Source: Ophelia neglecta (lineage: Eukaryota). Taken from it: a stretch of DNA of 64,000 nt. Under the pieces are notes generated by a model, which was not told where the DNA came from, did no database searches, and worked only from the letters and a program-made list of their open reading frames with translations. The stretch's first letter is position 1; each line of letters opens with the position of its first letter. Both the position numbers and the translations under genes were made by a program. The stretch spans positions 34,720,001 to 34,784,000 of the forward strand of contig OZ260661.1 of the NCBI GenBank assembly GCA_965285935.1. The letters are read 5' to 3'. Below, piece after piece: positions 1 to 42,196 of this stretch.

Positions 1-911
1 TGATGTATTGTTAGGTGTTGTTTGCCCAAAACAAGTTGGATGTTAATATGAAAATGATCTACTTCGTTTAACCAATACTAATGTATGTTGCAAAGTACGA
101 GATTCGGAATACTGTTTGCACAGCAGACAGACGTGCGTTTGTATCAATAAACTGATTCCAAAATGACTTCAATCGAAGATTGACAGAAAATACAATTAAA
201 CTCAATTCAATACTAATTGTCAGTTGTTTACAGGCTGTAATTCAAATTAACTCGCGCATCAAATATGTTATGTGCATAATATAACTCAGTCATGCATCGA
301 GTAGCCTAACGTGTGTAAAAACACATCCTTGTTTCTCTCGATATAAATTATGCGTATGAATTGATTATTTGTGTACAGACTTACTTCCTCATCGTCCTCC
401 TTGCTCGACCGCCCCATCCCCTTCCCATAGTCACCATTTTTATTCCATAATAGTTTAGTAATCATTGAAAATGAAATGAGCTGCGATGTGGACGCTTATA
501 CGGTTAAATGCACATCAATTACTCAATAAATCCGCCCGTGGTAATAAGTTTATGAGATTCTGCTAAAGTATGCATTACAATTGCGAATACCTATGCATTA
601 AAATAAACATTTTTAGGAATGTGGAAAGTTTAATACATTGCGAGAGGGTAGATGAATTCCGGATTGCCTTGGCAAATGTGACTAGTTCTCTAGAAAGCTC
701 CCTCTACGTCACATATTTATTACAGGCGCTAAGCTTTCTGAACAGAATACCACGCAAACCTAAATTCGTATTACTGTGCGTGTCACCTTAACAGCAAACT
801 TTCCAATGTAAAAACACTTACACGTTTAAAATGTGTTCAAACAATGCGAGAAACGTTTTCAACAATTCTATATCTACTTACATATTTTAATGGCTTAAAG
901 TCGTATCTCAC

Positions 912-1035
912 CTATCCGACCAGTTCCCAATGGGAACGTAGTCATATCTTCCGTTTAGCTGCCTTTGATACTGATAAATTGTGTAACGTCCCATCGCATC
1001 ACCATTTTCGTTGAATTTAACTTTTCCAGAATGAC
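912..1035 (-). CDS. mGluR: mGluR coding exon 6, end of Venus flytrap domain; gene continues beyond the window start
   Basis: cctcacctag| [43 protein letters not shown]|GTGAGA; matches V-x-F-x-x-NGDA-x-GRY-x-I-x-QYQ...IG-x-W; 124 nt, phase 1 to 2. Confidence 0.93.
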
Positions 1036-1945
1036 CTAGGTGAGGTGGTGAAAGCACAATCAGAGCGTCGTGTGATATATAGGAGACCCATATGCCAATG
1101 TAGATGATTATTATATTACAGTTCACCATACTGTCTTTAAAGATGAGCTGCCTCAAAGACTATACTTATTGTCATGGCAAATTGTTCTGTTAAATCCACC
1201 CAGGACGAATTTTATTGACTATTCTACTTAAATCCTACTTTTACGATATAAAAAGCAGCTATTACAAGAGGCTAATTAGTAAACAGTCAAAGGATAGATA
1301 AAGGCGAGGAAATCTATACTATATCTAATACACTTACATTCTGAACACAATGGCAACTCTACAGCCATGCCCAATCTCGCTATCCAAAAAACTAGAAAAA
1401 TGCGCAGTGCGCAGGTCCCACTAATCCATAATTCATGCTTGTAAGCAGGATGCAAATCAATGAAGCAAAACTGTGTGCTTTGTGTGTAACAAGGACAAAA
1501 ATAAAGAGATTGCAATAACTGAATCCGGCAAAAAGTATTGCAGTGTTTTGTTAATATTTCCCAATTAATAAGTACATCACAGTTCTTATATTATAAATTG
1601 GTTAATATATTGTTTTCAGTTACAGAAAGCACTTCACTAACAAGTATACCAAAATGCTTGTTCTTTCAAATGTTTGCCACAAATGCACACACTGTGAATG
1701 CTACTGAAGGATAAGCGGGAGAACGCTTATATGGATCTATATGAAATACCGATAGGTATCTAATGGTTCAATATTCTAATTTACATTTTGATTTTTTTGT
1801 AGGTAATCGAAATGAGTAGATACATATACGATGCAGTATATATAGTTGGAACTCGGCGGGAACAACGTTGGAATTTTAAATAATGGGTGTACACTGAAGT
1901 GCTAAAAATAATGCATTCCGCGGTTCGAACCACTTGCCCACTAAC

Positions 1946-2146
1946 CAATAAAAGAAACCTTTCTGATATGTTTTAGTAATTGCGGCCCGGCCACAGGAAG
2001 CATTTCCCGGCACATTCCACGGGAATACCAACACTTTTCCAAGTGCAGGCTCTTAATTGCGAGCGCCATAGCATAGACGGCATCCACAACAAAAGGCACC
2101 AGACCCTCCTGCTTATAAGATGGATCGGAAGACAATGATTCTTGGC
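1946..2146 (-). CDS. mGluR: mGluR exon 5b, alternative duplicated exon
   Basis: tgttatttag| (G)QESLSSDPSYKQEGLVPFVVDAVYAMALAIKSLHLEKCWYSRGMCREMLPVAGPQLLKHIRKVSFI G|GTTAGT; 201 nt, phase 1-1. Confidence 0.92.
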
Positions 2147-2999
2147 CTAAATAACATAAATGTAAGCGCAATAATTAGTTTAAAAAACATCTAACACTCA
2201 TTCCAGCACAGCTAATCTAAGATATAATTTATATGTATCTCTCTCTTTCTCTCGATCTGGTTGATTTGCGCATGCGCATGAACAATCCACATCCGCTCAT
2301 GTGCTGACCGAAGACATTTAAGTAGAAAAACAAGTGATCATGTGAAAGGTTAGCTGAGATTAGGTAGGTTACAAACACCGTTTGGCTTGATTGTCACATT
2401 CAATGTCAATACTCTGTAAGCAGCTTTAGCAAAATGCAGTCTATCCAAGCTTGATGGTCGAGCGAAATGCGACAGCGAATGTGCAATAAAACCGCCATTG
2501 ATCTGTGAGACAAAGCTTATGTATTAGTTATCACTTGAAACGACCACAGCGGGTGACTATTCGACATGCAAATATGGTAATAGTTGAGGAGGCTAATGAG
2601 GGTTGTAAACAGAAAGAGTACAATAATCAAATAGCAAGTTCTAGTTTCAAATGTAAATACGCGATATATTACATTTAAAACAGAAATTATCTAAATTAAC
2701 ACCTAGAAATAGATATAAAGCTGCAAAGTTGTCTGCATTTGATATATATATATATGGGAAAAATGCGTCGCCAAAGTTGAATGAAAGGAAATGCGTTTCA
2801 TTTGAAGCATATTTCGGTTTGGTTCCTTAAAGAAACTAGCATTCTTAAACGCCAAATCACGGGGCCGAGAACATACTGATAGTTATTTGTGCTTGAAGGC
2901 TGAGGAGATTTTGGAGAGCATATATGTTTCCTGTCAGCTGGTGAAAATGTCCTCATATACATACAATATACCTGGAAGTTTTCGGAAGAGCAAACTAAC

Positions 3000-3200
3000 C
3001 GAAAAATGATACATTTCTGATATAACTCAGTATAAGTTCGCCTTCTGGGTGGCCGAGGAGCTTGCAACGACGTAGTCGCCGGGTACGACACTCCGCGGTC
3101 AGCATGTTATGTAGCGCATGTGCCATGGCATACACAGCATCCACGACGAACGGAACAATACCCTCCTGTTCGTAAGTCTCATGGGTAATTCTTAGTGTAT
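3000..3200 (-). CDS. mGluR: mGluR exon 5a, alternative duplicated exon (not in ORF track in this frame)
   Basis: tttttttctcttggcaag| (D)TLRITHETYEQEGIVPFVVDAVYAMAHALHNMLTAECRTRRLRRCKLLGHPEGELILSYIRNVSFF G|GTTAGT; open frame, 201 nt, phase 1-1, homologous to 1946-2146. Confidence 0.85.
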
Positions 3201-3590
3201 CTTGCCAAGAGAAAAAAATTTAGACATGTTAATTTGTCAAAATATGTGAAGATTGCCAGTCTCAAGTCCTACCTGTAAAAGATATCCAGTAGTTTTATCA
3301 AATGAACATGCTTGTGCGATTTGAAACAGTAACAATAGGTCATTAAGCTTTTTTTTCAATACAAACATCATAACAAATTGATAGCGGAAAAATATAAATA
3401 ACGGCAAATTAGTAAATGATATTTCACACAGTTTAACAATACAGTTTGGAATATTTGCCTTACACATGATATGATGTGATGGGATTAACTTCCATATTTC
3501 AACGGTTAGCTACTTGCCAGGTTAAGCAATTATTCTATTTTCAGCTATTGGCACGCAACCAACATTCATACTTTTACACCTCCACAATCA

Positions 3591-3776
<186 letters not shown>

Positions 3777-4031
3777 TTAAGGAGAATAATATAGAGGAGA
3801 AGAGGTAGTGAAATCAGGTGTCTAGTTAGTTGAGAAGAACAAGTCAGATACCATAGCACGTCCAGTTGTTAGAAAACAATCTAAACCTTCATGTGTTCTG
3901 TTTTAGCTCAAAACATAAACCATATACTAAAATTATTAGACCCAAGATGCACCGCCCATCATAGTCATTGACACATATTTCTCTTGTCAGAATTGGATTT
4001 TATAACATAAATCCGGTGAACACAGACTTAC

Positions 4032-4319
4032 CCTTTAACAGTTTACGTTGCGGTAATATTGTAACTGCTCCTTCTGCAGCGAATTCTTGATCCTCGACCG
4101 GTGTTTGTTTCGCGCCCCAGCTGTCGCTGGCCAGCCAGTAAAAAGAGTTTGTATGTCGCATGAATATCGTTTCATTAATGAGCCGTCTACAGTTATCCTC
4201 ATTAACAAACAAAACAACCACCTTCGCCTTTGAGGAGACAAGAAGGTTGGTGATGATATTGGAAAAAGTATTGGCTTTTATTTCTCTTGGAATTTTCTCT
4301 CGTTTAGCTATACAGATAC
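4032..4319 (-). CDS. mGluR: mGluR coding exon 3
   Basis: ttatttccag| GICIAKREKIPR...AKVVVLFVNEDNCRRL...WLASDSWGAK...AAEGAVTILPQRKLLK G|GTAAGT; 288 nt, phase 1-1. Confidence 0.95.
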
Positions 4320-6608: not shown

Positions 6609-8463
6609 AGCCACGAGTATAATGCAAATAGTCACGAAAAAACAAATACAGTTATTGCAAGCTTTTTAAGACAATAATTCATTATTTACTATTTGAAAAA
6701 AATGAAAATATGCATAGTTTTCCATGTTCCAAACAAAATTTATTAATCCGGTTTTGGTTTTAACAGATATCCACAGATAAGCTGTTTTTTTACCCTTCAA
6801 TCACATTATCATATCCTGCAAGGGTCGGTGTTTGATATATGACATTCACTATCTACTATCCTTTGCAACGAACCAAATTCCACCTGCAACGCTACCCCTT
6901 TGGCCCAGCTAGTCATTATAATTATCATCAAGGAGTGATGACTATCACAATAAGACATCATTCCTGACCCCATCCCTTCTTATGCCTATTAACTGGAAAG
7001 TGGAAAGCTTTCGAAACTCTTTCCTTGCTTCAATGAATTCGACCATCATAAGCTTCGGCACATTCTAAGCAATAAATGAGGAGCTGCTCGTTATTTCTCA
7101 ATATTGAAAGCAAACCAGGACCGACTGTCTACCAGTGTTTCTAGGGTAACCTCATTGACCCCATCTTCAGAAAGAAATAACATGGTCTAGGCCTCAATTC
7201 CTGCGCAACTCATTGGATAGTATAACTGGACCCTTTCGCCTTGTTTATTATCAAATTATTTGAAAACATTACAAGATACTTCCCAATTTTAACTGGCATC
7301 GTTTGAAGAGGAAACTGATCTTTTAGATAGACGTCTTTATGGCAACAGAGATGATCTAGATTTCAGCCGATGTGATAAAATTAGGCGTAAGAAAAGTCAA
7401 TCCCTTTGGCGAAATTACATTTCTTTGAACTCCCTTCATACCATCACGGAAATGTGTTGTGCCCCAATGGGAGTACAATGAACATCCGTTGTGTGATTTC
7501 GCTGGCCATCTTACTCAAACTCATCCTGGACAGGAACCGTTTTATGAAGAATAAAAATCCGAATCCCAAGATTGACCGACGTCACGGTAGTATTGCTGGC
7601 TAGAAGGTTAATTACTTTGATGAGTTTTTTAAGCCACCGCTTGAATATGGTATAGGATACTGACACCTTTCATCAGAACTCTTTTGATTTGCCAAAATAC
7701 AAACACCCAAATATATTTACGGTTCTTCATAATATAAATGTGCTCCGTGCCCTTAAACTGAATCTAGGTCAACCCTTTGTGGTCGACAGCATATAAAGGT
7801 ATATTTCCACGCGACATTTCCACACCCAGCAGCCAAGTATGAAGATCAGTGGACGTCATATAAATACTTTCCCATGGAATGTCACCAAGTCAGATTCAGC
7901 ATGCGTACATAAATGAAGCTGTTTATTACACTAGCAATATCCTCATTGCAAAACGCCTTTGGCTTAACGATCGATATTTGTTCGTATTATAAAAGGGAAA
8001 TTCAGTTGAGGCATGTGCATGAGATGTCAGATATATATACACGCCCCTGTTTAGAATAAGCACAATTCTAGGTGCTCCATTCCAGTTACCGCCATATTAG
8101 CTGCGTATCAGGCGTTTGTTTTAAGTATGTGTTTGGTATTTCTGTTTCGATTGTTCTTCTGGTGAAGATATAAGAAGTGTGTCCATCTTTTTATTTTTAT
8201 CATCATCGCCATTATTGTAAGCTTTATTATTATCATTAATATTTCAAATTTATATAGCTCTTAGACCCTCAGAAACGCATTAAACGTTATCAAACAAATG
8301 GATTTGGATATCCTAGGCAACATGTTAAAATCGAAGAAGCTAAAAATTAATGCCTCAAAATTGCTTAAAATAACTTAAGTTGAGTACAAATAAAATATTA
8401 CAGTTCTAGACTATTGAAATGCTTACACGAATAAATTAGTTTTAGTGCCCTTCAGAATGATTA

Positions 8464-8772
<309 letters not shown>

Positions 8773-10111
8773 TCAATACAAGGAGCATTGCATTAAAAAT
8801 CATATATGAAGACCGTGTTAACAAAATACCGGATGATTTCTACATCATTTTGTGTAATTAAAAGGCAAAGTAACAGTAATAGCTTAATAATATCTAGCCA
8901 TATCGGATAGTTTCCTGTTTAATTAAGTGGGAGTCTATTCAATGCTAATGCTTTGACATAACATCATGAAGGAGATGATTAATTCCACAACACGTTAGGT
9001 GTTGACGTATGCAGTAATCATTGGTATCACCGTTATTTCCAAGAGCTGACTTTGACAGATGGATTGGGGATTCCAGTGATAATTGGGTCTCGAATAAAAT
9101 AATTTCGGTAACCATGAGACAAATGAGTAATCCAACTCTTATGTGATTTGCACTTTTTATATAAATTTCAATGAGCAAATAAAACTTCATACACATCAAA
9201 TAAACTAGGGTAAAATATGCAATATGCTAATGACTCTATGAATGACCTTGGGATATCAGCAGCGATTAAAATAACGTAAACTGTCTTATAGGGGACTATA
9301 AGTATAATTGAAATAAAAAACAAAGTGCTCCTCCGTTGATAATTTTATGAATATGGGATATTTGTACCAGTGGGAAATGACAGTCCTTCTCACATACAGA
9401 ACCACCTACTAAACCAGTCGAAAACATACGCATCCAAGCATACGAAACGACTAAGATAAAAGACAAACTGATAATGAAACGTTGGTGAGAGTCCCCTGTT
9501 CGACCTGCTGTGGGGCTACTGTTGTATAAAATCGCTATCTTTCTCCGACAATTCCTTGATCCGAGGCGATTCATATTACGCCATGCATACGTCAAAATAT
9601 AACCTGTTTCTCAGCGTAGCTAAAGAGCCCAATTTCCAGAATGACTAACATTATTGTCCTTGTGATGCCGATAAATTAATTGAAACGAGGTCATCAATTT
9701 GTCAGAAGAGGATATTTGATATTCATATTTCAGTGTTAAACTTTAACTGACTTCATGAAAATTGACCTGGGGATACATTGACGACCGAAATATTCACATA
9801 TACAGGTTGGACAGCCGATTGGTTTATTTTTAATCGTATCGACTTAAAATGATTGACTGGACAATCATAAGCTAATATGTATTGTCCAGAAGTGACATGG
9901 TAAACAATCTACAAAAACTGTGCTTATCACGTCAATTTTTATCTTTGCCAATTGACCGTTGAAACACCTCGAAACTTTTACAGAGATAGGACTCGTGACA
10001 ACGGTTCTAATGACAAAATCATGAAAATGAGGACGACATAACGAACCTAAAGACTGAACATTGTCGACAAATCCTTGGCAGACCTATCTCAAATTTATGT
10101 GTGTTGGTGGT

Positions 10112-10480
10112 TAGGGTTGCATGACGTTTCATTTGAAACTATCCGATCCCAATACTTGTGAAACAATTCCGATACCACAAGATACCGATACTTTTTAGAG
10201 ATCGTTGGTTCAAATAGGCGGTGTTTCAAGGGTGTAGAGTTGCATTATAATTTCTTTTCAAACCATTCCAAAATGCAACAGTTGAGCTTTAACAAATATA
10301 CTGAATGCAGGAAAAGTTTGTAGATCTACAACATTTTCTATTTACTACATTATAATTTCAACCCTTTTCATTGAAGAAAGTATCGTATCGTAGTATCATA
10401 ATCAGTACTAAAATATACCGATAAGGATACGTCAAATCTGATAGGAAACGGGTAGTAGAGGATACCGGTATGCAGCCCTA
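10112..10480. mobile_element. hAT-like MITE remnant
   Basis: Termini TAGGGTTGCAT / ATGCAGCCCTA (10 of 11 inverted) with internal (C)GATAC / GTATCG repeats; no clear target-site duplication. Confidence 0.6.
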
Positions 10481-13400
10481 TTAAAGAAGGGCACATGCTC
10501 ACAACACAAGAGGATTAATACCAACTCTTGTTATAGTCAGTGGCCCCAATTCTTGTTACACCCATTATCCCAATATTTTTATCGAAATCAAAGATTGAAC
10601 CGCTGCTGTGACATCCTGGCCTCCTGTCAACTTGTCCTTTGATGTGTCAACTAGATAAGTTCAATAAGAGAAGCTAGTGTGTCAGTTGTGTAGAAAAAGT
10701 TATACGCTGCAAACTAGGTTATATACTCTCTTAGGTAACAAAATTTCAATAGCATAAAAAACCACTAACCACAGACAACTAACACTGGTATTGAACCACG
10801 AGTTCATCACCTGACGTAAAGTAACGCTTTATTATATGGGATAATCTATCTACTAATAGTAAATTATTAGGATGATGAGTGTATGCGCACCTGTTGATGA
10901 CGTGACGAGCGTTTATAATAGCTGCCTCAGGGGCACACAAGGCGCCATAAATTATCATCGCCAGTGTTCCATCAGACGGGGCAATGCCTTGTGTATGACC
11001 AGTCGGGCCAGGTGATAGACTACGCCAGCTGTAGTCCTATTTGCTTGAGGGTATGTTACCTAGGTGTGGCATATCAAATGCAAAGCGACGACCAGAAAAG
11101 ACTTTACAAACAGCCCCTTGGCTTTGATAGCATCGCAGTTATTAACATCACACAAGTTTTAGTACTATGTGTGCTTGTAACATATATGTGTCTGGTAAAT
11201 AATATACGCATTAGTTTTCAGATAAACAATTACTATTCAAATTGTCCTAAATGGTTTCAGTGCATAGCCTGACTGACGATAAAACTTACACTCTTCATGG
11301 CACCATGTTTTTGCGAAAAAAATGGGGCAACATCGTAATATTCACCAGTTGTCATGGTATAATGAATAACTAATTTAATTCGGCTTATTTGCGCTAAGTT
11401 TCCTCGACTTACTTGATATTTCAATTTGACTTCCTTTTATGAAGACCCCACTGTATGAGTAGAGATACTTTTTGCATATCAATTGATCGACAATGTACGA
11501 TTATTCTACTGCTTGACCGGCTTTTAAAAATTAATTTGCTTAAAGACGTTTCAAAGACGACTGGCGAGCAGAAAACTATTACGTAGGGAGCGTAAATTGC
11601 AAGTGTGCAGGTAGGAAAAAATTGGTAAGAAAATAAAAACCTTTATCAGAGTATGGTGGGATTATTTGTAGGAATGATTTCCATCGTTTTTTGTTGTTGA
11701 AATGTTAGTATAGAGAAAGCTTTTAAAACTTCTACTTCATCACAGATAACTAAAATATATATTAATGCCACGTTCATTTAAGTACACCATGCTGAATACA
11801 AGATACAGTATATGCTCTAGATCGGAATTGAAGGCAGTAATGCTGGAGCGGCGGACTGAAGTGACTCTGTGGATGAAACGTGCAATAAATCACGCAGTAC
11901 CTTGAATCGGTGGGTCATTCAATAGTTATTAATCAAGTCGGCAACCAAACGCCAGGGATGAAGATTAACTTGAATAATTTTCTTCGCCAAAGGACCAGAC
12001 TGGACCCCAAAGTCGATAACACTATTTTATAAAATGACAACGCTGTTAGAAGTTTGAATGAACCCATCGCAGAATAAGTAATACTCAACGTAGCGACAAA
12101 CTTCGTATGACGACTATTCATATTCAATATATTCAAGAACTTTCGTGCCAAAATATTCCGGCAACCATTTCTAGAAATCCTGCCTTCTTTAGCCCCATCC
12201 CGAGCACCCCCCCCCCCTCTGCGGTATCTATTATAAAGTGCCGAAAAGGTTACATGTTTTTATTTCTTATATCTCAAGTTTGGCATTTTTTCAAAACATT
12301 TGACACAACTATCATTCACAACTTATAGTCCAACTTAAGAGATGAACACTAAGTTACAACAAATTGCATTTTGCTATGTTATTATTCTCCTATACAGAGA
12401 AATATCGAGTACCTTTCATGTCCATCGTCTTTATTTATGTTACTAACAACGCGCCTGCTATCAATTTTCCTCTGAATGAATCCCTTACGGCCGGCTCAGA
12501 TGTTCAATATTGTGTCTGCCAGCGACTGATGACTATTCTTTGACAATCAATTATATCAGTATGGTTTTACAAAAGACTGTAGCCCGTGGTCTAGAAGGAG
12601 TAAAAATAAGCACTCATCATCAAATAAACACCAGTAAACATACCAAAGCAGGGCCATAGTATGGTAATTATAGATCTTATGATTAGGGTTTATATTTACT
12701 CAATATCCTTAATTGATTCATCAGAAAAGCACCTTGAAATATGGGCCACGTAGTTGAATAATTGTAGTCTAAAACACCATATCAAAGTAAATATATATTT
12801 ATATTTGCCCGCTTTGTTTATAGTTCTTGCCTCTGAAAACAGTGGTATAATCAGCTTATTATAATATACCTAGGTTTTTCGCCAAGGGGCGTAGGGGTGG
12901 GGGGGGGGGGGGGAGAGGAAACAGCTTCCACTTTTTTACGGTCGACCTCAACGTAGGATATAGAAACAGCAATTGTTATGGGAATAGATTTGATGATGAA
13001 GCTCAAACTGATTCATATAGATACAATTGATACAAATAGGGTAATCTTTATATATAGTCTTGCACGCGCTGTGTAATATCATGTTACGCTCTTGACGACT
13101 TCATATGCGTTCTTTGACAAAAGTGAGTCAGTCCCAAATTTTGCAGCAATGGTTAGCGACCCGCACACCAGCAAATGGTTCCAGCAATACTCTTAAATGC
13201 AATTGGTGTGTTATGAGGCACTTAACAGAAACTTTCTTAGGACACTCGGTATTTATTGCGTAAATGGCTTGTTAGACATGTCATGGAAAAATTATCATTA
13301 CTCGAGGTTTTGATCAGACCATCATGGTGTTAAGAATAGTTATGCCTGTGATATAATGTGTGTAGCATAGAACTTGACAACAACAGGTTTTGGAGTTAGT

Positions 13401-41100: not shown

Positions 41101-41707
41101 AATTGAAATGAGGCTAAAATACTTCTAAAATGAAACAAACGATGATAATTAGTAAAGAATCTACTTCGTGTATTGGAACAGCTGCGATTGTGCCTCTTAT
41201 GCGATAAGCAAATGTTACAGTTTTTCACCGGGGTTTTCCGCTTATTCTACGCAAACTTTGCGCCTAGCATACTTTGGAAAAAATAACGGCGTATGGACCA
41301 TACAGGGTGGGAAATGTACAGAGAACTCATGGCTCATGCACACTGGTTAAATGTTTGAATATGATGGATGCGGCCTTATCAGCTTGATAAGTATAGAAGA
41401 AGCGTGTCGAAATACACAGGCTACACAATAATTGTTTGTGGTCTATTAGCGGTAATATAATTTTGCGCCTTTTAATGAAAGGTGGCATAATAATTTGAAG
41501 TAGATACCGGGAGCGCGTCACCGATTTAATTTTTTCCTAGGGACAATCGCGCCCCACTGAGCAAATTTAAACGAAATCAAATAGCGTTAAATGGAAAAAA
41601 AAGTCGCAAATTTTTTTCGAACCAGAGTATACTCCTTAACAGAAAACGTGTCATTAACTACCCGAGCGGCAAGTGCAAAAGATATATTGTATTTGATCTG
41701 AACTTAC

Positions 41708-42196
41708 CTGAAAAAGTCTGAGAATGTTGGCCACCATGATTGAAACAGGACTGGCCGCAGCTCCGATCACTCCAGCCACCGGCTTGTACGTGGTCTGTCT
41801 AGGAATTTCACCACTCTCACACCGGTACTCATTAAAATCCAACGTGCTCATATGAGCTTTAATGAATTCTAGAGACTGTTCTAGAGCATACGTGTCTCGT
41901 AAACAGGTGTCTAAAATGTGTACCCCGAGGGTTATGTTAGGCAGAAGAAAAGGATCACGATTAATTTTATCAATGGCATACAACATTGCTTCAACTCTTT
42001 GAATTCCTTTCTCTTCTTTTATAGCGCCACAAATTCTACCAAGGGTTCCTTTCTCGTGCATCGGAAACAGTCCTCCTAAGATAATGTCTCCATCTAACCT
42101 GATGGCTTTGTGGTCGGGAGGCAAGGATTTCATACTACAGTAAACGTCGCCGACAAGAAAACACAGAAGAAATGGAAGTAGCCCTTGAAAGGCCAT
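41708..42196 (-). CDS. mGluR: Metabotropic glutamate receptor (group III/mGluR8-like), first coding exon: signal peptide plus start of Venus flytrap domain
   Basis: Translates [21 protein letters not shown] (signal-like)...[12 protein letters not shown]...[16 protein letters not shown]...LLPNITLG...[14 protein letters not shown]...[21 protein letters not shown], all hallmark mGluR motifs. Ends at donor CAG|GTAAGT (phase 0). ATG at 42196 preferred over the GTG start in the ORF track. Confidence 0.95.

What the first reader, a model, noticed from the sequence alone, without database searches (positions are those of the whole stretch)
1946..3200. Tandemly duplicated, apparently mutually exclusive exons in the ligand-binding domain of an mGluR
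Seen: two homologous exons (3200-3000 and 2146-1946), each 201 nt, phase 1-1, stop-free, with the same G|GTTAGT donor. They share QEG(I/L)VPFVVDAVYAMA, two Cys and IR.VSF.G, but differ strongly elsewhere and at synonymous sites. Either one joins exon 4 to exon 6 in frame. Known: this segment is a single-copy structural part of the Venus flytrap fold and contributes to the agonist pocket; described vertebrate mGluR splicing mostly changes the C-tail or truncates the protein. Inference: an old exon duplication with both copies under purifying selection gives two receptors with different ectodomains from one gene.
Basis: partly seen in the sequence, partly recalled or inferred. Interest (0 to 1): 0.85.

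Follow-up and report, generated by a model that had tools for sequence, protein, structure and literature searches.

The report
Conserved twin exons in an mGluR
An invertebrate (probably annelid) glutamate-receptor-like gene carries two old, intact copies of the exon that builds part of its ligand-binding pocket, kept side by side in at least six species. They are very likely used one at a time to make two receptor versions, but no RNA data were available to prove it.

Summary
On the minus strand, 3200-3000 (5a) and 2146-1946 (5b) are each 201 nt, stop-free in phase 1-1, with an AG acceptor and a G|GTTAGT donor. Both match the same part of Pfam ANF_receptor (positions about 264-325).

They lie between exon 4 (3748-3620) and exon 6 (1035-912) of a complete class C receptor gene whose nearest solved relatives are group III mGluRs.

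The copies share 42% of residues and their synonymous sites are saturated. The same 5a-type then 5b-type pair, in the same order and phase, occurs in five other contigs from other species. Orthologous copies are more alike (52-69%) than the two copies within one gene (42-53%). pN is about 0.2 where pS is saturated, so both copies are constrained coding exons and the duplication is old.

The residue after QEG aligns with mGluR7 K407, which contacts agonist. It is I or V in all 14 5a-type copies and L in all 15 5b-type copies.

Mutually exclusive use is still an inference:
- No RNA runs were found for this organism.
- All copies are multiples of 3 nt, so frame does not enforce exclusivity.
- No docking/selector RNA structure was found.

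No description of such exons in an mGluR ligand-binding domain turned up in the literature searches.

The parts
41684..42187 (-). Exon 1 (approximate extent). It holds the signal region and the start of the Venus flytrap domain, including the GIQR motif that aligns with the distal-pocket Arg.
   Evidence: tblastn with full-length mGluR homologues; Pfam ANF_receptor profile positions 3-75, E 7e-19
8496..8721 (-). Exon 2 (start approximate), containing the SYAST motif.
   Evidence: Pfam ANF_receptor positions 73-152, E 3.5e-24; tblastn
4032..4319 (-). Exon 3, containing the ASDSWGAK motif.
   Evidence: Sequence and splice sites; Pfam ANF_receptor positions 147-247; 80% identical to L019
3620..3748 (-). 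Exon 4, the constitutive exon upstream of the pair. It ends in phase 1 with donor G|GTAAGA.
   Evidence: conserved in L019, L014, L015 and L024
3000..3200 (-). Exon 5a (A-type), 201 nt, phase 1-1, donor G|GTTAGT. Ile follows QEG, and a P-E-G motif follows the Cys loop.
   Evidence: orthologues in five other contigs; pN 0.21 against L019
2147..2999 (-). The 853-nt intron between the two copies. Three blocks upstream of 5b are shared with L019: 2489-2458, 2414-2385 and the palindrome GCGCATGCGC at 2277-2268.
   Evidence: blastn and alignment against L019; the palindrome occurs once in the 64 kb (0.01 expected) and at the equivalent place in L019
1946..2146 (-). Exon 5b (B-type), 201 nt, phase 1-1, donor G|GTTAGT. 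Leu follows QEG, and MLPVAGP follows the Cys loop.
   Evidence: orthologues in five other contigs; sits in the B clade of the tree with support 82/89; pN 0.19 against L019
912..1035 (-). Exon 6, the constitutive exon downstream of the pair.
   Evidence: Pfam ANF_receptor positions 327-352; conserved in all related loci

Best explanation
The two segments are a pair of homologous alternative exons. They arose from an ancient tandem duplication of the exon that encodes one structural unit of the N-terminal lobe of the Venus flytrap domain. That unit comprises the pocket position after QEG, helix alpha-L, a two-cysteine loop, and the following helix and strand. Both copies are functional coding exons, kept in several distantly related, probably annelid, species. 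The most likely use is one copy per mRNA (exon 4-5a-6 or exon 4-5b-6). That would give two receptors differing in one pocket-lining residue (I/V against L), in the Cys loop and in the stretch after it. Shown here: the homology, intact splice signals and phase, the age of the duplication, orthology by type, and purifying selection on both copies. Inferred: mutually exclusive splicing, and any difference in ligand or partner binding. The way one exon is chosen is unknown. The conserved weak GTTAGT donors and the conserved intron blocks upstream of 5b point to regulated exon choice, since frame and steric limits are ruled out.
For: Anatomy and Pfam co-location. The gene is complete, with ANF_receptor, NCD3G and 7tm_3.

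The A-then-B pair lies between exon 4 and exon 6 in L019, L014, L015, L024 and the 27.6-kb ENA contig carrying P0002 and P0222. In the four relatives whose DNA was read, all copies are 198-204 nt, a multiple of 3, in phase 1-1, with AG and GT signals.

Identity is 0.52-0.69 between species for the same type, against 0.39-0.53 between types. pS is 0.7-0.9 in every comparison. pN between the window and L019 is 0.21 for 5a and 0.19 for 5b. The B copies form a clade with support 82/89, and no species' two copies are sisters.

Type-specific residues: after QEG, I or V in 14 of 14 A copies and L in 15 of 15 B copies. That position aligns with the Lys in the QEGK motif of mGluR7 and mGluR4. PMC13544217 describes mGluR7 K407 as contacting glutamate and other agonists.

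The GTTAGT donor occurs at 7 of the 10 pair exons whose donors were read.
Against: There is no transcript evidence of any kind. The run search returned only three runs from one sample, and their contigs cover the introns, so they are DNA.

Every copy is a multiple of 3 nt, so including both or skipping both would stay in frame and NMD could not remove such products. The 853-nt intron excludes steric exclusion. No inter-intron helix scored above shuffled controls in the window or in L019.

No annotated full-length protein from the pair-bearing lineage was found, so no database isoforms could be compared. One related lineage (L020/L021) has only the B-type exon, so the A copy is dispensable at least there.
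Confidence: 0.78

Rival explanations
1. Both exons are spliced into the same mRNA, always or often, so the protein carries an in-frame tandem repeat of the 67-residue segment in its flytrap domain.
For: All copies are multiples of 3 nt in every species examined. The intron between them is long enough for normal splicing. No exclusivity mechanism was found.
Against: Both copies keep the same buried-helix and pocket motifs and match the same Pfam positions, as expected if each fills the same place in the fold. Among the 150 best database matches, no protein had two adjacent copies; the multi-match proteins are fused tandem genes. By general knowledge, same-length tandem homologous exons are usually mutually exclusive.
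Confidence: 0.08
2. One copy is the default exon and the other is a rarely used or stage-specific cassette. This would produce some double-inclusion or double-skip products; it would not be a clean two-way switch.
For: Both skipping and double inclusion stay in frame. One related lineage keeps only the B type, which suggests B can serve alone.
Against: Both types show equal constraint over saturating divergence (pN 0.21 and 0.19). Type-specific residues are invariant. Both argue for regular use of each copy.
Confidence: 0.09
3. One copy is a dead pseudo-exon left over from a duplication.
For: Only the lack of RNA data, plus the derived look of 5b in this species (AMALAIKSL where relatives have AMAHAL).
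Against: The introns of the window and L019 are otherwise almost unalignable. Yet both exons keep an open frame, their phase and splice sites in the five genomes whose DNA was read, and the sixth contig has separate called ORFs of both types. pN is about 0.2 where pS is saturated. At this base composition, my own estimate is that a random 67-codon frame stays open only about 1% of the time.
Confidence: 0.03
4. The pair is an assembly artefact, such as a collapsed or duplicated haplotype.
For: None.
Against: The copies are only 42% identical at protein level. Single contigs from three runs span both. The same arrangement occurs in unrelated assemblies of other species.
Confidence: 0.01

Closest known systems
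FGFR2 IIIb/IIIc mutually exclusive exons (from general knowledge, not tested here)
   Same: Two adjacent homologous exons encode the same half-domain of a receptor's ligand-binding region, and the choice between them changes the binding surface.
   Different: A different protein fold and family. In FGFR2, exclusivity and its regulators are shown by experiment. Here the splicing pattern and any ligand change are unproven.
AMPA receptor flip/flop exons (from general knowledge)
   Same: A tandem homologous exon pair of equal length in a glutamate receptor's extracellular or ligand-binding region, old and conserved.
   Different: That is an ionotropic receptor, and flip/flop alters desensitisation without changing a pocket residue. 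It is a vertebrate case with ample transcript data.
Vertebrate group III mGluRs (mGluR4/6/7/8)
   Same: They are the best solved-structure matches for both exons (E 1e-10 to 3e-13). The domain order ANF_receptor, NCD3G, 7tm_3 is the same, and the exon covers the equivalent stretch.
   Different: By general knowledge the vertebrate genes have a single copy of this exon; gene structure was not examined here. They carry Lys after QEG, where this gene has I or L. My literature searches found no description of alternative exons in this part of the domain.
Insect mX receptor (DmXR, mangetout)
   Same: An mGluR-family receptor that keeps the residues for the amino-acid moiety but has changed the distal pocket residues that bind the gamma-carboxylate, and is not activated by glutamate (PMC2695807). 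This gene likewise lacks the distal Lys.
   Different: The aligned distal Arg (GIQR) is retained here. Orthology to DmXR was not tested. DmXR is not known to have alternative pocket exons.

Membership tests
Class C GPCR, metabotropic glutamate receptor family | Venus flytrap domain (Pfam ANF_receptor) spread over the N-terminal exons | tested here: met
   Exons 1, 2, 3, 5a/5b and 6 hit PF01094 in collinear profile order.
Class C GPCR, metabotropic glutamate receptor family | Cysteine-rich NCD3G domain followed by the 7tm_3 domain | tested here: met
   The exon just beyond the window start (L023 9944-9021, minus strand) hits PF07562 (E 2e-13) and PF00003 (E 2e-64).
Class C GPCR, metabotropic glutamate receptor family | Residues that hold the alpha-amino-acid moiety (the Ser/Thr of SYAST, the Asp of ASDxWG) | tested here: met
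   The SYAST and ASDSWGAK motifs are present in exons 2 and 3. Their roles are from general knowledge and were not tested.
Glutamate-activated mGluR (canonical distal pocket) | Lys after QEG/QDS that contacts the agonist (mGluR7 K407) | tested here: not met
   Ile in 5a and Leu in 5b align with that Lys. Its role is stated in PMC13544217. The same holds for all A and B copies and for the arthropod orthologues.
Mutually exclusive homologous exon pair | Adjacent, homologous exons of the same phase and near-equal length, each with its own splice sites | tested here: met
Mutually exclusive homologous exon pair | Both copies conserved and constrained in orthologous genes | tested here: met
   Six contigs or species carry the pair. 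Identity and pN/pS are and the tree.
Mutually exclusive homologous exon pair | Mature transcripts contain exactly one of the two | not testable with these tools
   No RNA run was found for this organism. The only runs are DNA.
Mutually exclusive homologous exon pair | A known exclusivity mechanism (steric hindrance, incompatible spliceosomes, frame/NMD, or competing RNA helices) | tested here: inconclusive
   The intron is 853 nt, so there is no steric limit. Both donors are of the GT U2 type. The lengths are multiples of 3, so there is no NMD policing. No helix between introns scored above shuffles in the window or L019.
Insect mX receptor (DmXR) clade | Both distal-pocket residues conserved in all mGluRs are replaced | tested here: inconclusive
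   The Lys is replaced, but the Arg of GIQR is kept. The identity of the two DmXR residues was not verified from the paper, and orthology was not tested.

The most novel reading that the evidence does not exclude
The alternative exon acts as a ligand-pocket switch. The receptor clade has lost the canonical distal Lys, so it may not be glutamate-tuned. By swapping the pocket residue (I/V against L) together with the adjacent Cys loop, one gene would yield two receptors with different amino-acid ligand selectivity or allosteric behaviour. That arrangement would have been kept across much of an animal phylum.
Probability: 0.3. Interest if true: 0.75.

Novelty: new member of a known kind. Interest (0 to 1): 0.55.

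Why it matters
In the described vertebrate genes, mGluR splice variation mostly alters the C-terminal tail or truncates the protein. A conserved pair of alternative exons inside the orthosteric domain would show that class C receptors can diversify ligand recognition by splicing, as FGFR2 does. The two natural versions differ at a defined pocket position and in one loop. They are therefore a ready-made experiment on how that part of the flytrap tunes agonist selectivity or activation. The receptor clade also lacks the canonical agonist-binding Lys, and its ligand is unknown.

Tried and rejected
- **RNA evidence.** The run search gave three runs of one sample. All are DNA, since their contigs span the introns.
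- **Annotated isoforms.** A region-limited search with a full-length crab homologue returned only arthropod proteins, each with a single exon-5 equivalent. Exon-sized searches returned unnamed fragments. A cluster look-up gave no names.
- **Proteins with several matches to the exon profile.** P0001 and P0083 are fused tandem genes of other class C receptors and show no double inclusion.
- **Docking/selector RNA helices.** The best helices between introns 4, a-b and 5 did not beat shuffled controls in the window or L019. An earlier, heavier duplex scan timed out.
- **Exon 5a pairing with the intron element upstream of 5b.** The duplex energy stood out in the window (z -3.9) but not in L019 (z 0.1), and plain alignment was not significant. 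I treat it as chance.
- **A decayed third exon copy in the intron.** Direct-repeat scores were weak (z 2.7-3.5) and fell at non-equivalent places. Not supported.
- **My first recall of the nearest vertebrate subgroup (group I, then group II) was wrong.** The solved-structure search shows group III is closest.
- **Joined spliced models.** Exon 4-5a-6 and exon 4-5b-6 were not built, searched or folded. All searches were done exon by exon, by reference.

Full report
**Observation.** On the minus strand, 3200-3000 and 2146-1946 are each 201 nt. Each follows an AG (caag|at and ttag|gc) and is followed by G|GTTAGT. Read in phase 1 they give 66-residue peptides with no stop.

Exon 4 ends at 3620 with one base of a Gly codon, and exon 6 starts at 1035. 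Either copy therefore joins them in frame. Both peptides hit Pfam ANF_receptor at the same profile positions, 266-325 and 264-325, so they encode the same piece of the fold.

Aligned with one compensated indel, they share 27 of 65 positions. Synonymous sites are saturated (pS 0.73). The 16-codon core QEG...AMA has pN 0.04.

**The gene.** tblastn with full-length homologues places exon 1 near 42187-41684, exon 2 near 8721-8496 and exon 3 at 4319-4032. Exon 4, the pair and exon 6 follow. The NCD3G plus 7tm_3 exon and the next exon lie just beyond the window start, in L023. The gene is intact.

Both exons match group III mGluRs (mGluR4, 7, 6, 8) best among solved structures, with E values from 1e-10 to 3e-13. 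Groups II and I come after. This corrected my own first recollection.

The best named match to the 7TM exon is a protein of the annelid Dimorphilus gyrociliatus, 74% identical over 74% of the query. Arthropod and mollusc matches are at 46-58%. The host is therefore probably an annelid, but this rests on that one line of evidence.

In the whole 762-Mb genome only this gene has a strong pair.

**Conservation.** Exon-sized fragments from public assemblies fall into two kinds:
- One kind has I or V after QEG and a P-P-E/D-G motif after the second Cys.
- The other has L after QEG and M-L-P-x-A/P-G-P.

Contig look-ups show both kinds in one gene, in the order A then B between exon 4 and exon 6:

| Contig | A-type exon | B-type exon |
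|---|---|---|
| L019 | 7714-7917 | 10014-10211 |
| L014 | 10044-10247 | 12513-12713 |
| L015 | 794-994 | 1986-2186 |
| L024 | about 1695-1886 | about 2648-2833 |
| 27.6-kb ENA contig | P0002 | P0222 (gene table only, no DNA) |

Wherever DNA was read, every copy is 198-204 nt, a multiple of 3, in phase 1-1, with AG and GT signals.

One related lineage (L020/L021) has only a B-type exon. A barnacle and other arthropods have one copy with a different intron layout.

**Selection and age.** Identity between species is 0.52-0.69 for the same type, 0.42-0.53 for A against B within a gene, and 0.39-0.52 for A against B between species. pS is 0.7-0.9 in all comparisons. pN between the window and its nearest relative L019 is 0.21 for 5a and 0.19 for 5b. 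The introns of these two species barely align.

In a maximum-likelihood tree the B copies form a clade with support 82/89. The A copies are unresolved among arthropod and vertebrate sequences, and no species' two copies are sisters. With 66 columns the tree is weak, but it agrees with the identity matrix.

The duplication therefore predates the split of these species, and both copies have stayed under purifying selection. This excludes a pseudo-exon and an assembly artefact. Single DNA contigs from three runs of one sample span both copies.

**What the exon encodes.** The Lys in the QEGK motif of mGluR7 and mGluR4 aligns with the residue after QEG here. [quoted passage not shown] It places the following stretch on helix alpha-L in the core of the N-terminal lobe.

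In this gene that position is Ile in 5a and Leu in 5b. Across all collected copies it is I or V in 14 of 14 A-type and L in 15 of 15 B-type. The arthropod orthologues also have Leu.

The motifs for the amino-acid moiety (SYAST, ASDSWGAK) and the GIQR Arg are present; their roles are from general knowledge. The clade thus keeps an amino-acid pocket but lacks the canonical distal Lys. This recalls the insect mX receptor, whose distal pocket diverged and which glutamate does not activate (PMC2695807). Orthology to it was not tested.

The two exon types also differ consistently in the two-cysteine loop and the stretch after it.

**How it most likely works.** Shown: two constrained, orthology-stable copies of one structural unit, each able to join exon 4 to exon 6. 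Inferred: one copy per mRNA, giving two receptors that differ in a pocket residue and a nearby loop. I put this at about 0.78.

Three points limit the claim:
- There is no transcript evidence.
- All copies are multiples of 3 nt, so frame and NMD cannot enforce exclusivity, and the 853-nt intron excludes steric hindrance.
- No helix between introns scored above shuffled controls in the window or L019.

Two features hint at regulated choice:
- The uncommon donor GTTAGT occurs at 7 of the 10 pair exons whose donors were read, including both exons in the window, L019 and L024.
- Blocks upstream of 5b are shared with L019 in an otherwise unalignable intron: 2489-2458, 2414-2385 and GCGCATGCGC at 2277-2268. 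The palindrome occurs once in the 64 kb (0.01 expected) and sits at the matching place in L019.

Their function is untested.

**Comparison with known systems and novelty.** In kind, this resembles the FGFR2 IIIb/IIIc and AMPA flip/flop exon pairs (general knowledge). Full-text searches found no report of mutually exclusive or tandemly duplicated exons in an mGluR ligand-binding domain, nor of annelid mGluR splicing. I file it as a new member of a known kind.

Noticed in passing
window 2268-2277 (minus-strand intron, 122 nt upstream of exon 5b); L019 9875-9884: The perfect palindrome GCGCATGCGC occurs once in the 64-kb window (0.01 expected) and at the matching distance upstream of exon 5b in L019. 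It contains GCAUG. From memory, it also resembles an NRF1-type DNA site. It is absent upstream of 5b in L014 and L015.
   Followed up: partly
G000 C12:23233676-23236075 (minus) and C12:23284700-23287833 (plus); loci L006, L008, L009, L011: Two further places each give two weak matches to the exon-5 profile, 2-3 kb apart on one strand (E 7e-4 to 5e-2; one has a TAG). They could be tandem class C receptor genes or further duplicated exons. I did not examine them.
   Followed up: no
L026 249-1332: An ENA contig of 1597 nt carries the equivalents of exons 2 to 6 as a nearly gap-free run of tblastn segments with no room for sizeable introns, and holds a single exon-5 equivalent. It is either transcript-derived or from an intron-poor genome. 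Its exon-4 insertion looks like the arthropod type.
   Followed up: no
window 850-3850: All seven single-base differences and the one 1-nt insertion between the assembly and the contigs of the three DNA runs lie in introns. None falls in exons 4, 5a, 5b or 6. The numbers are too small to test.
   Followed up: partly
L020 3416-5222; L021 2205-4011: A related GC-rich lineage (GCA_029980185 and a matching ENA contig) has only the B-type exon between exons 4 and 6, and its 7TM region is split differently. This suggests secondary loss of the A copy.
   Followed up: partly
window 8722-41683: Intron 1 of the gene is about 33 kb, far longer than the other introns (0.3-4 kb). Its content was not examined.
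   Followed up: no
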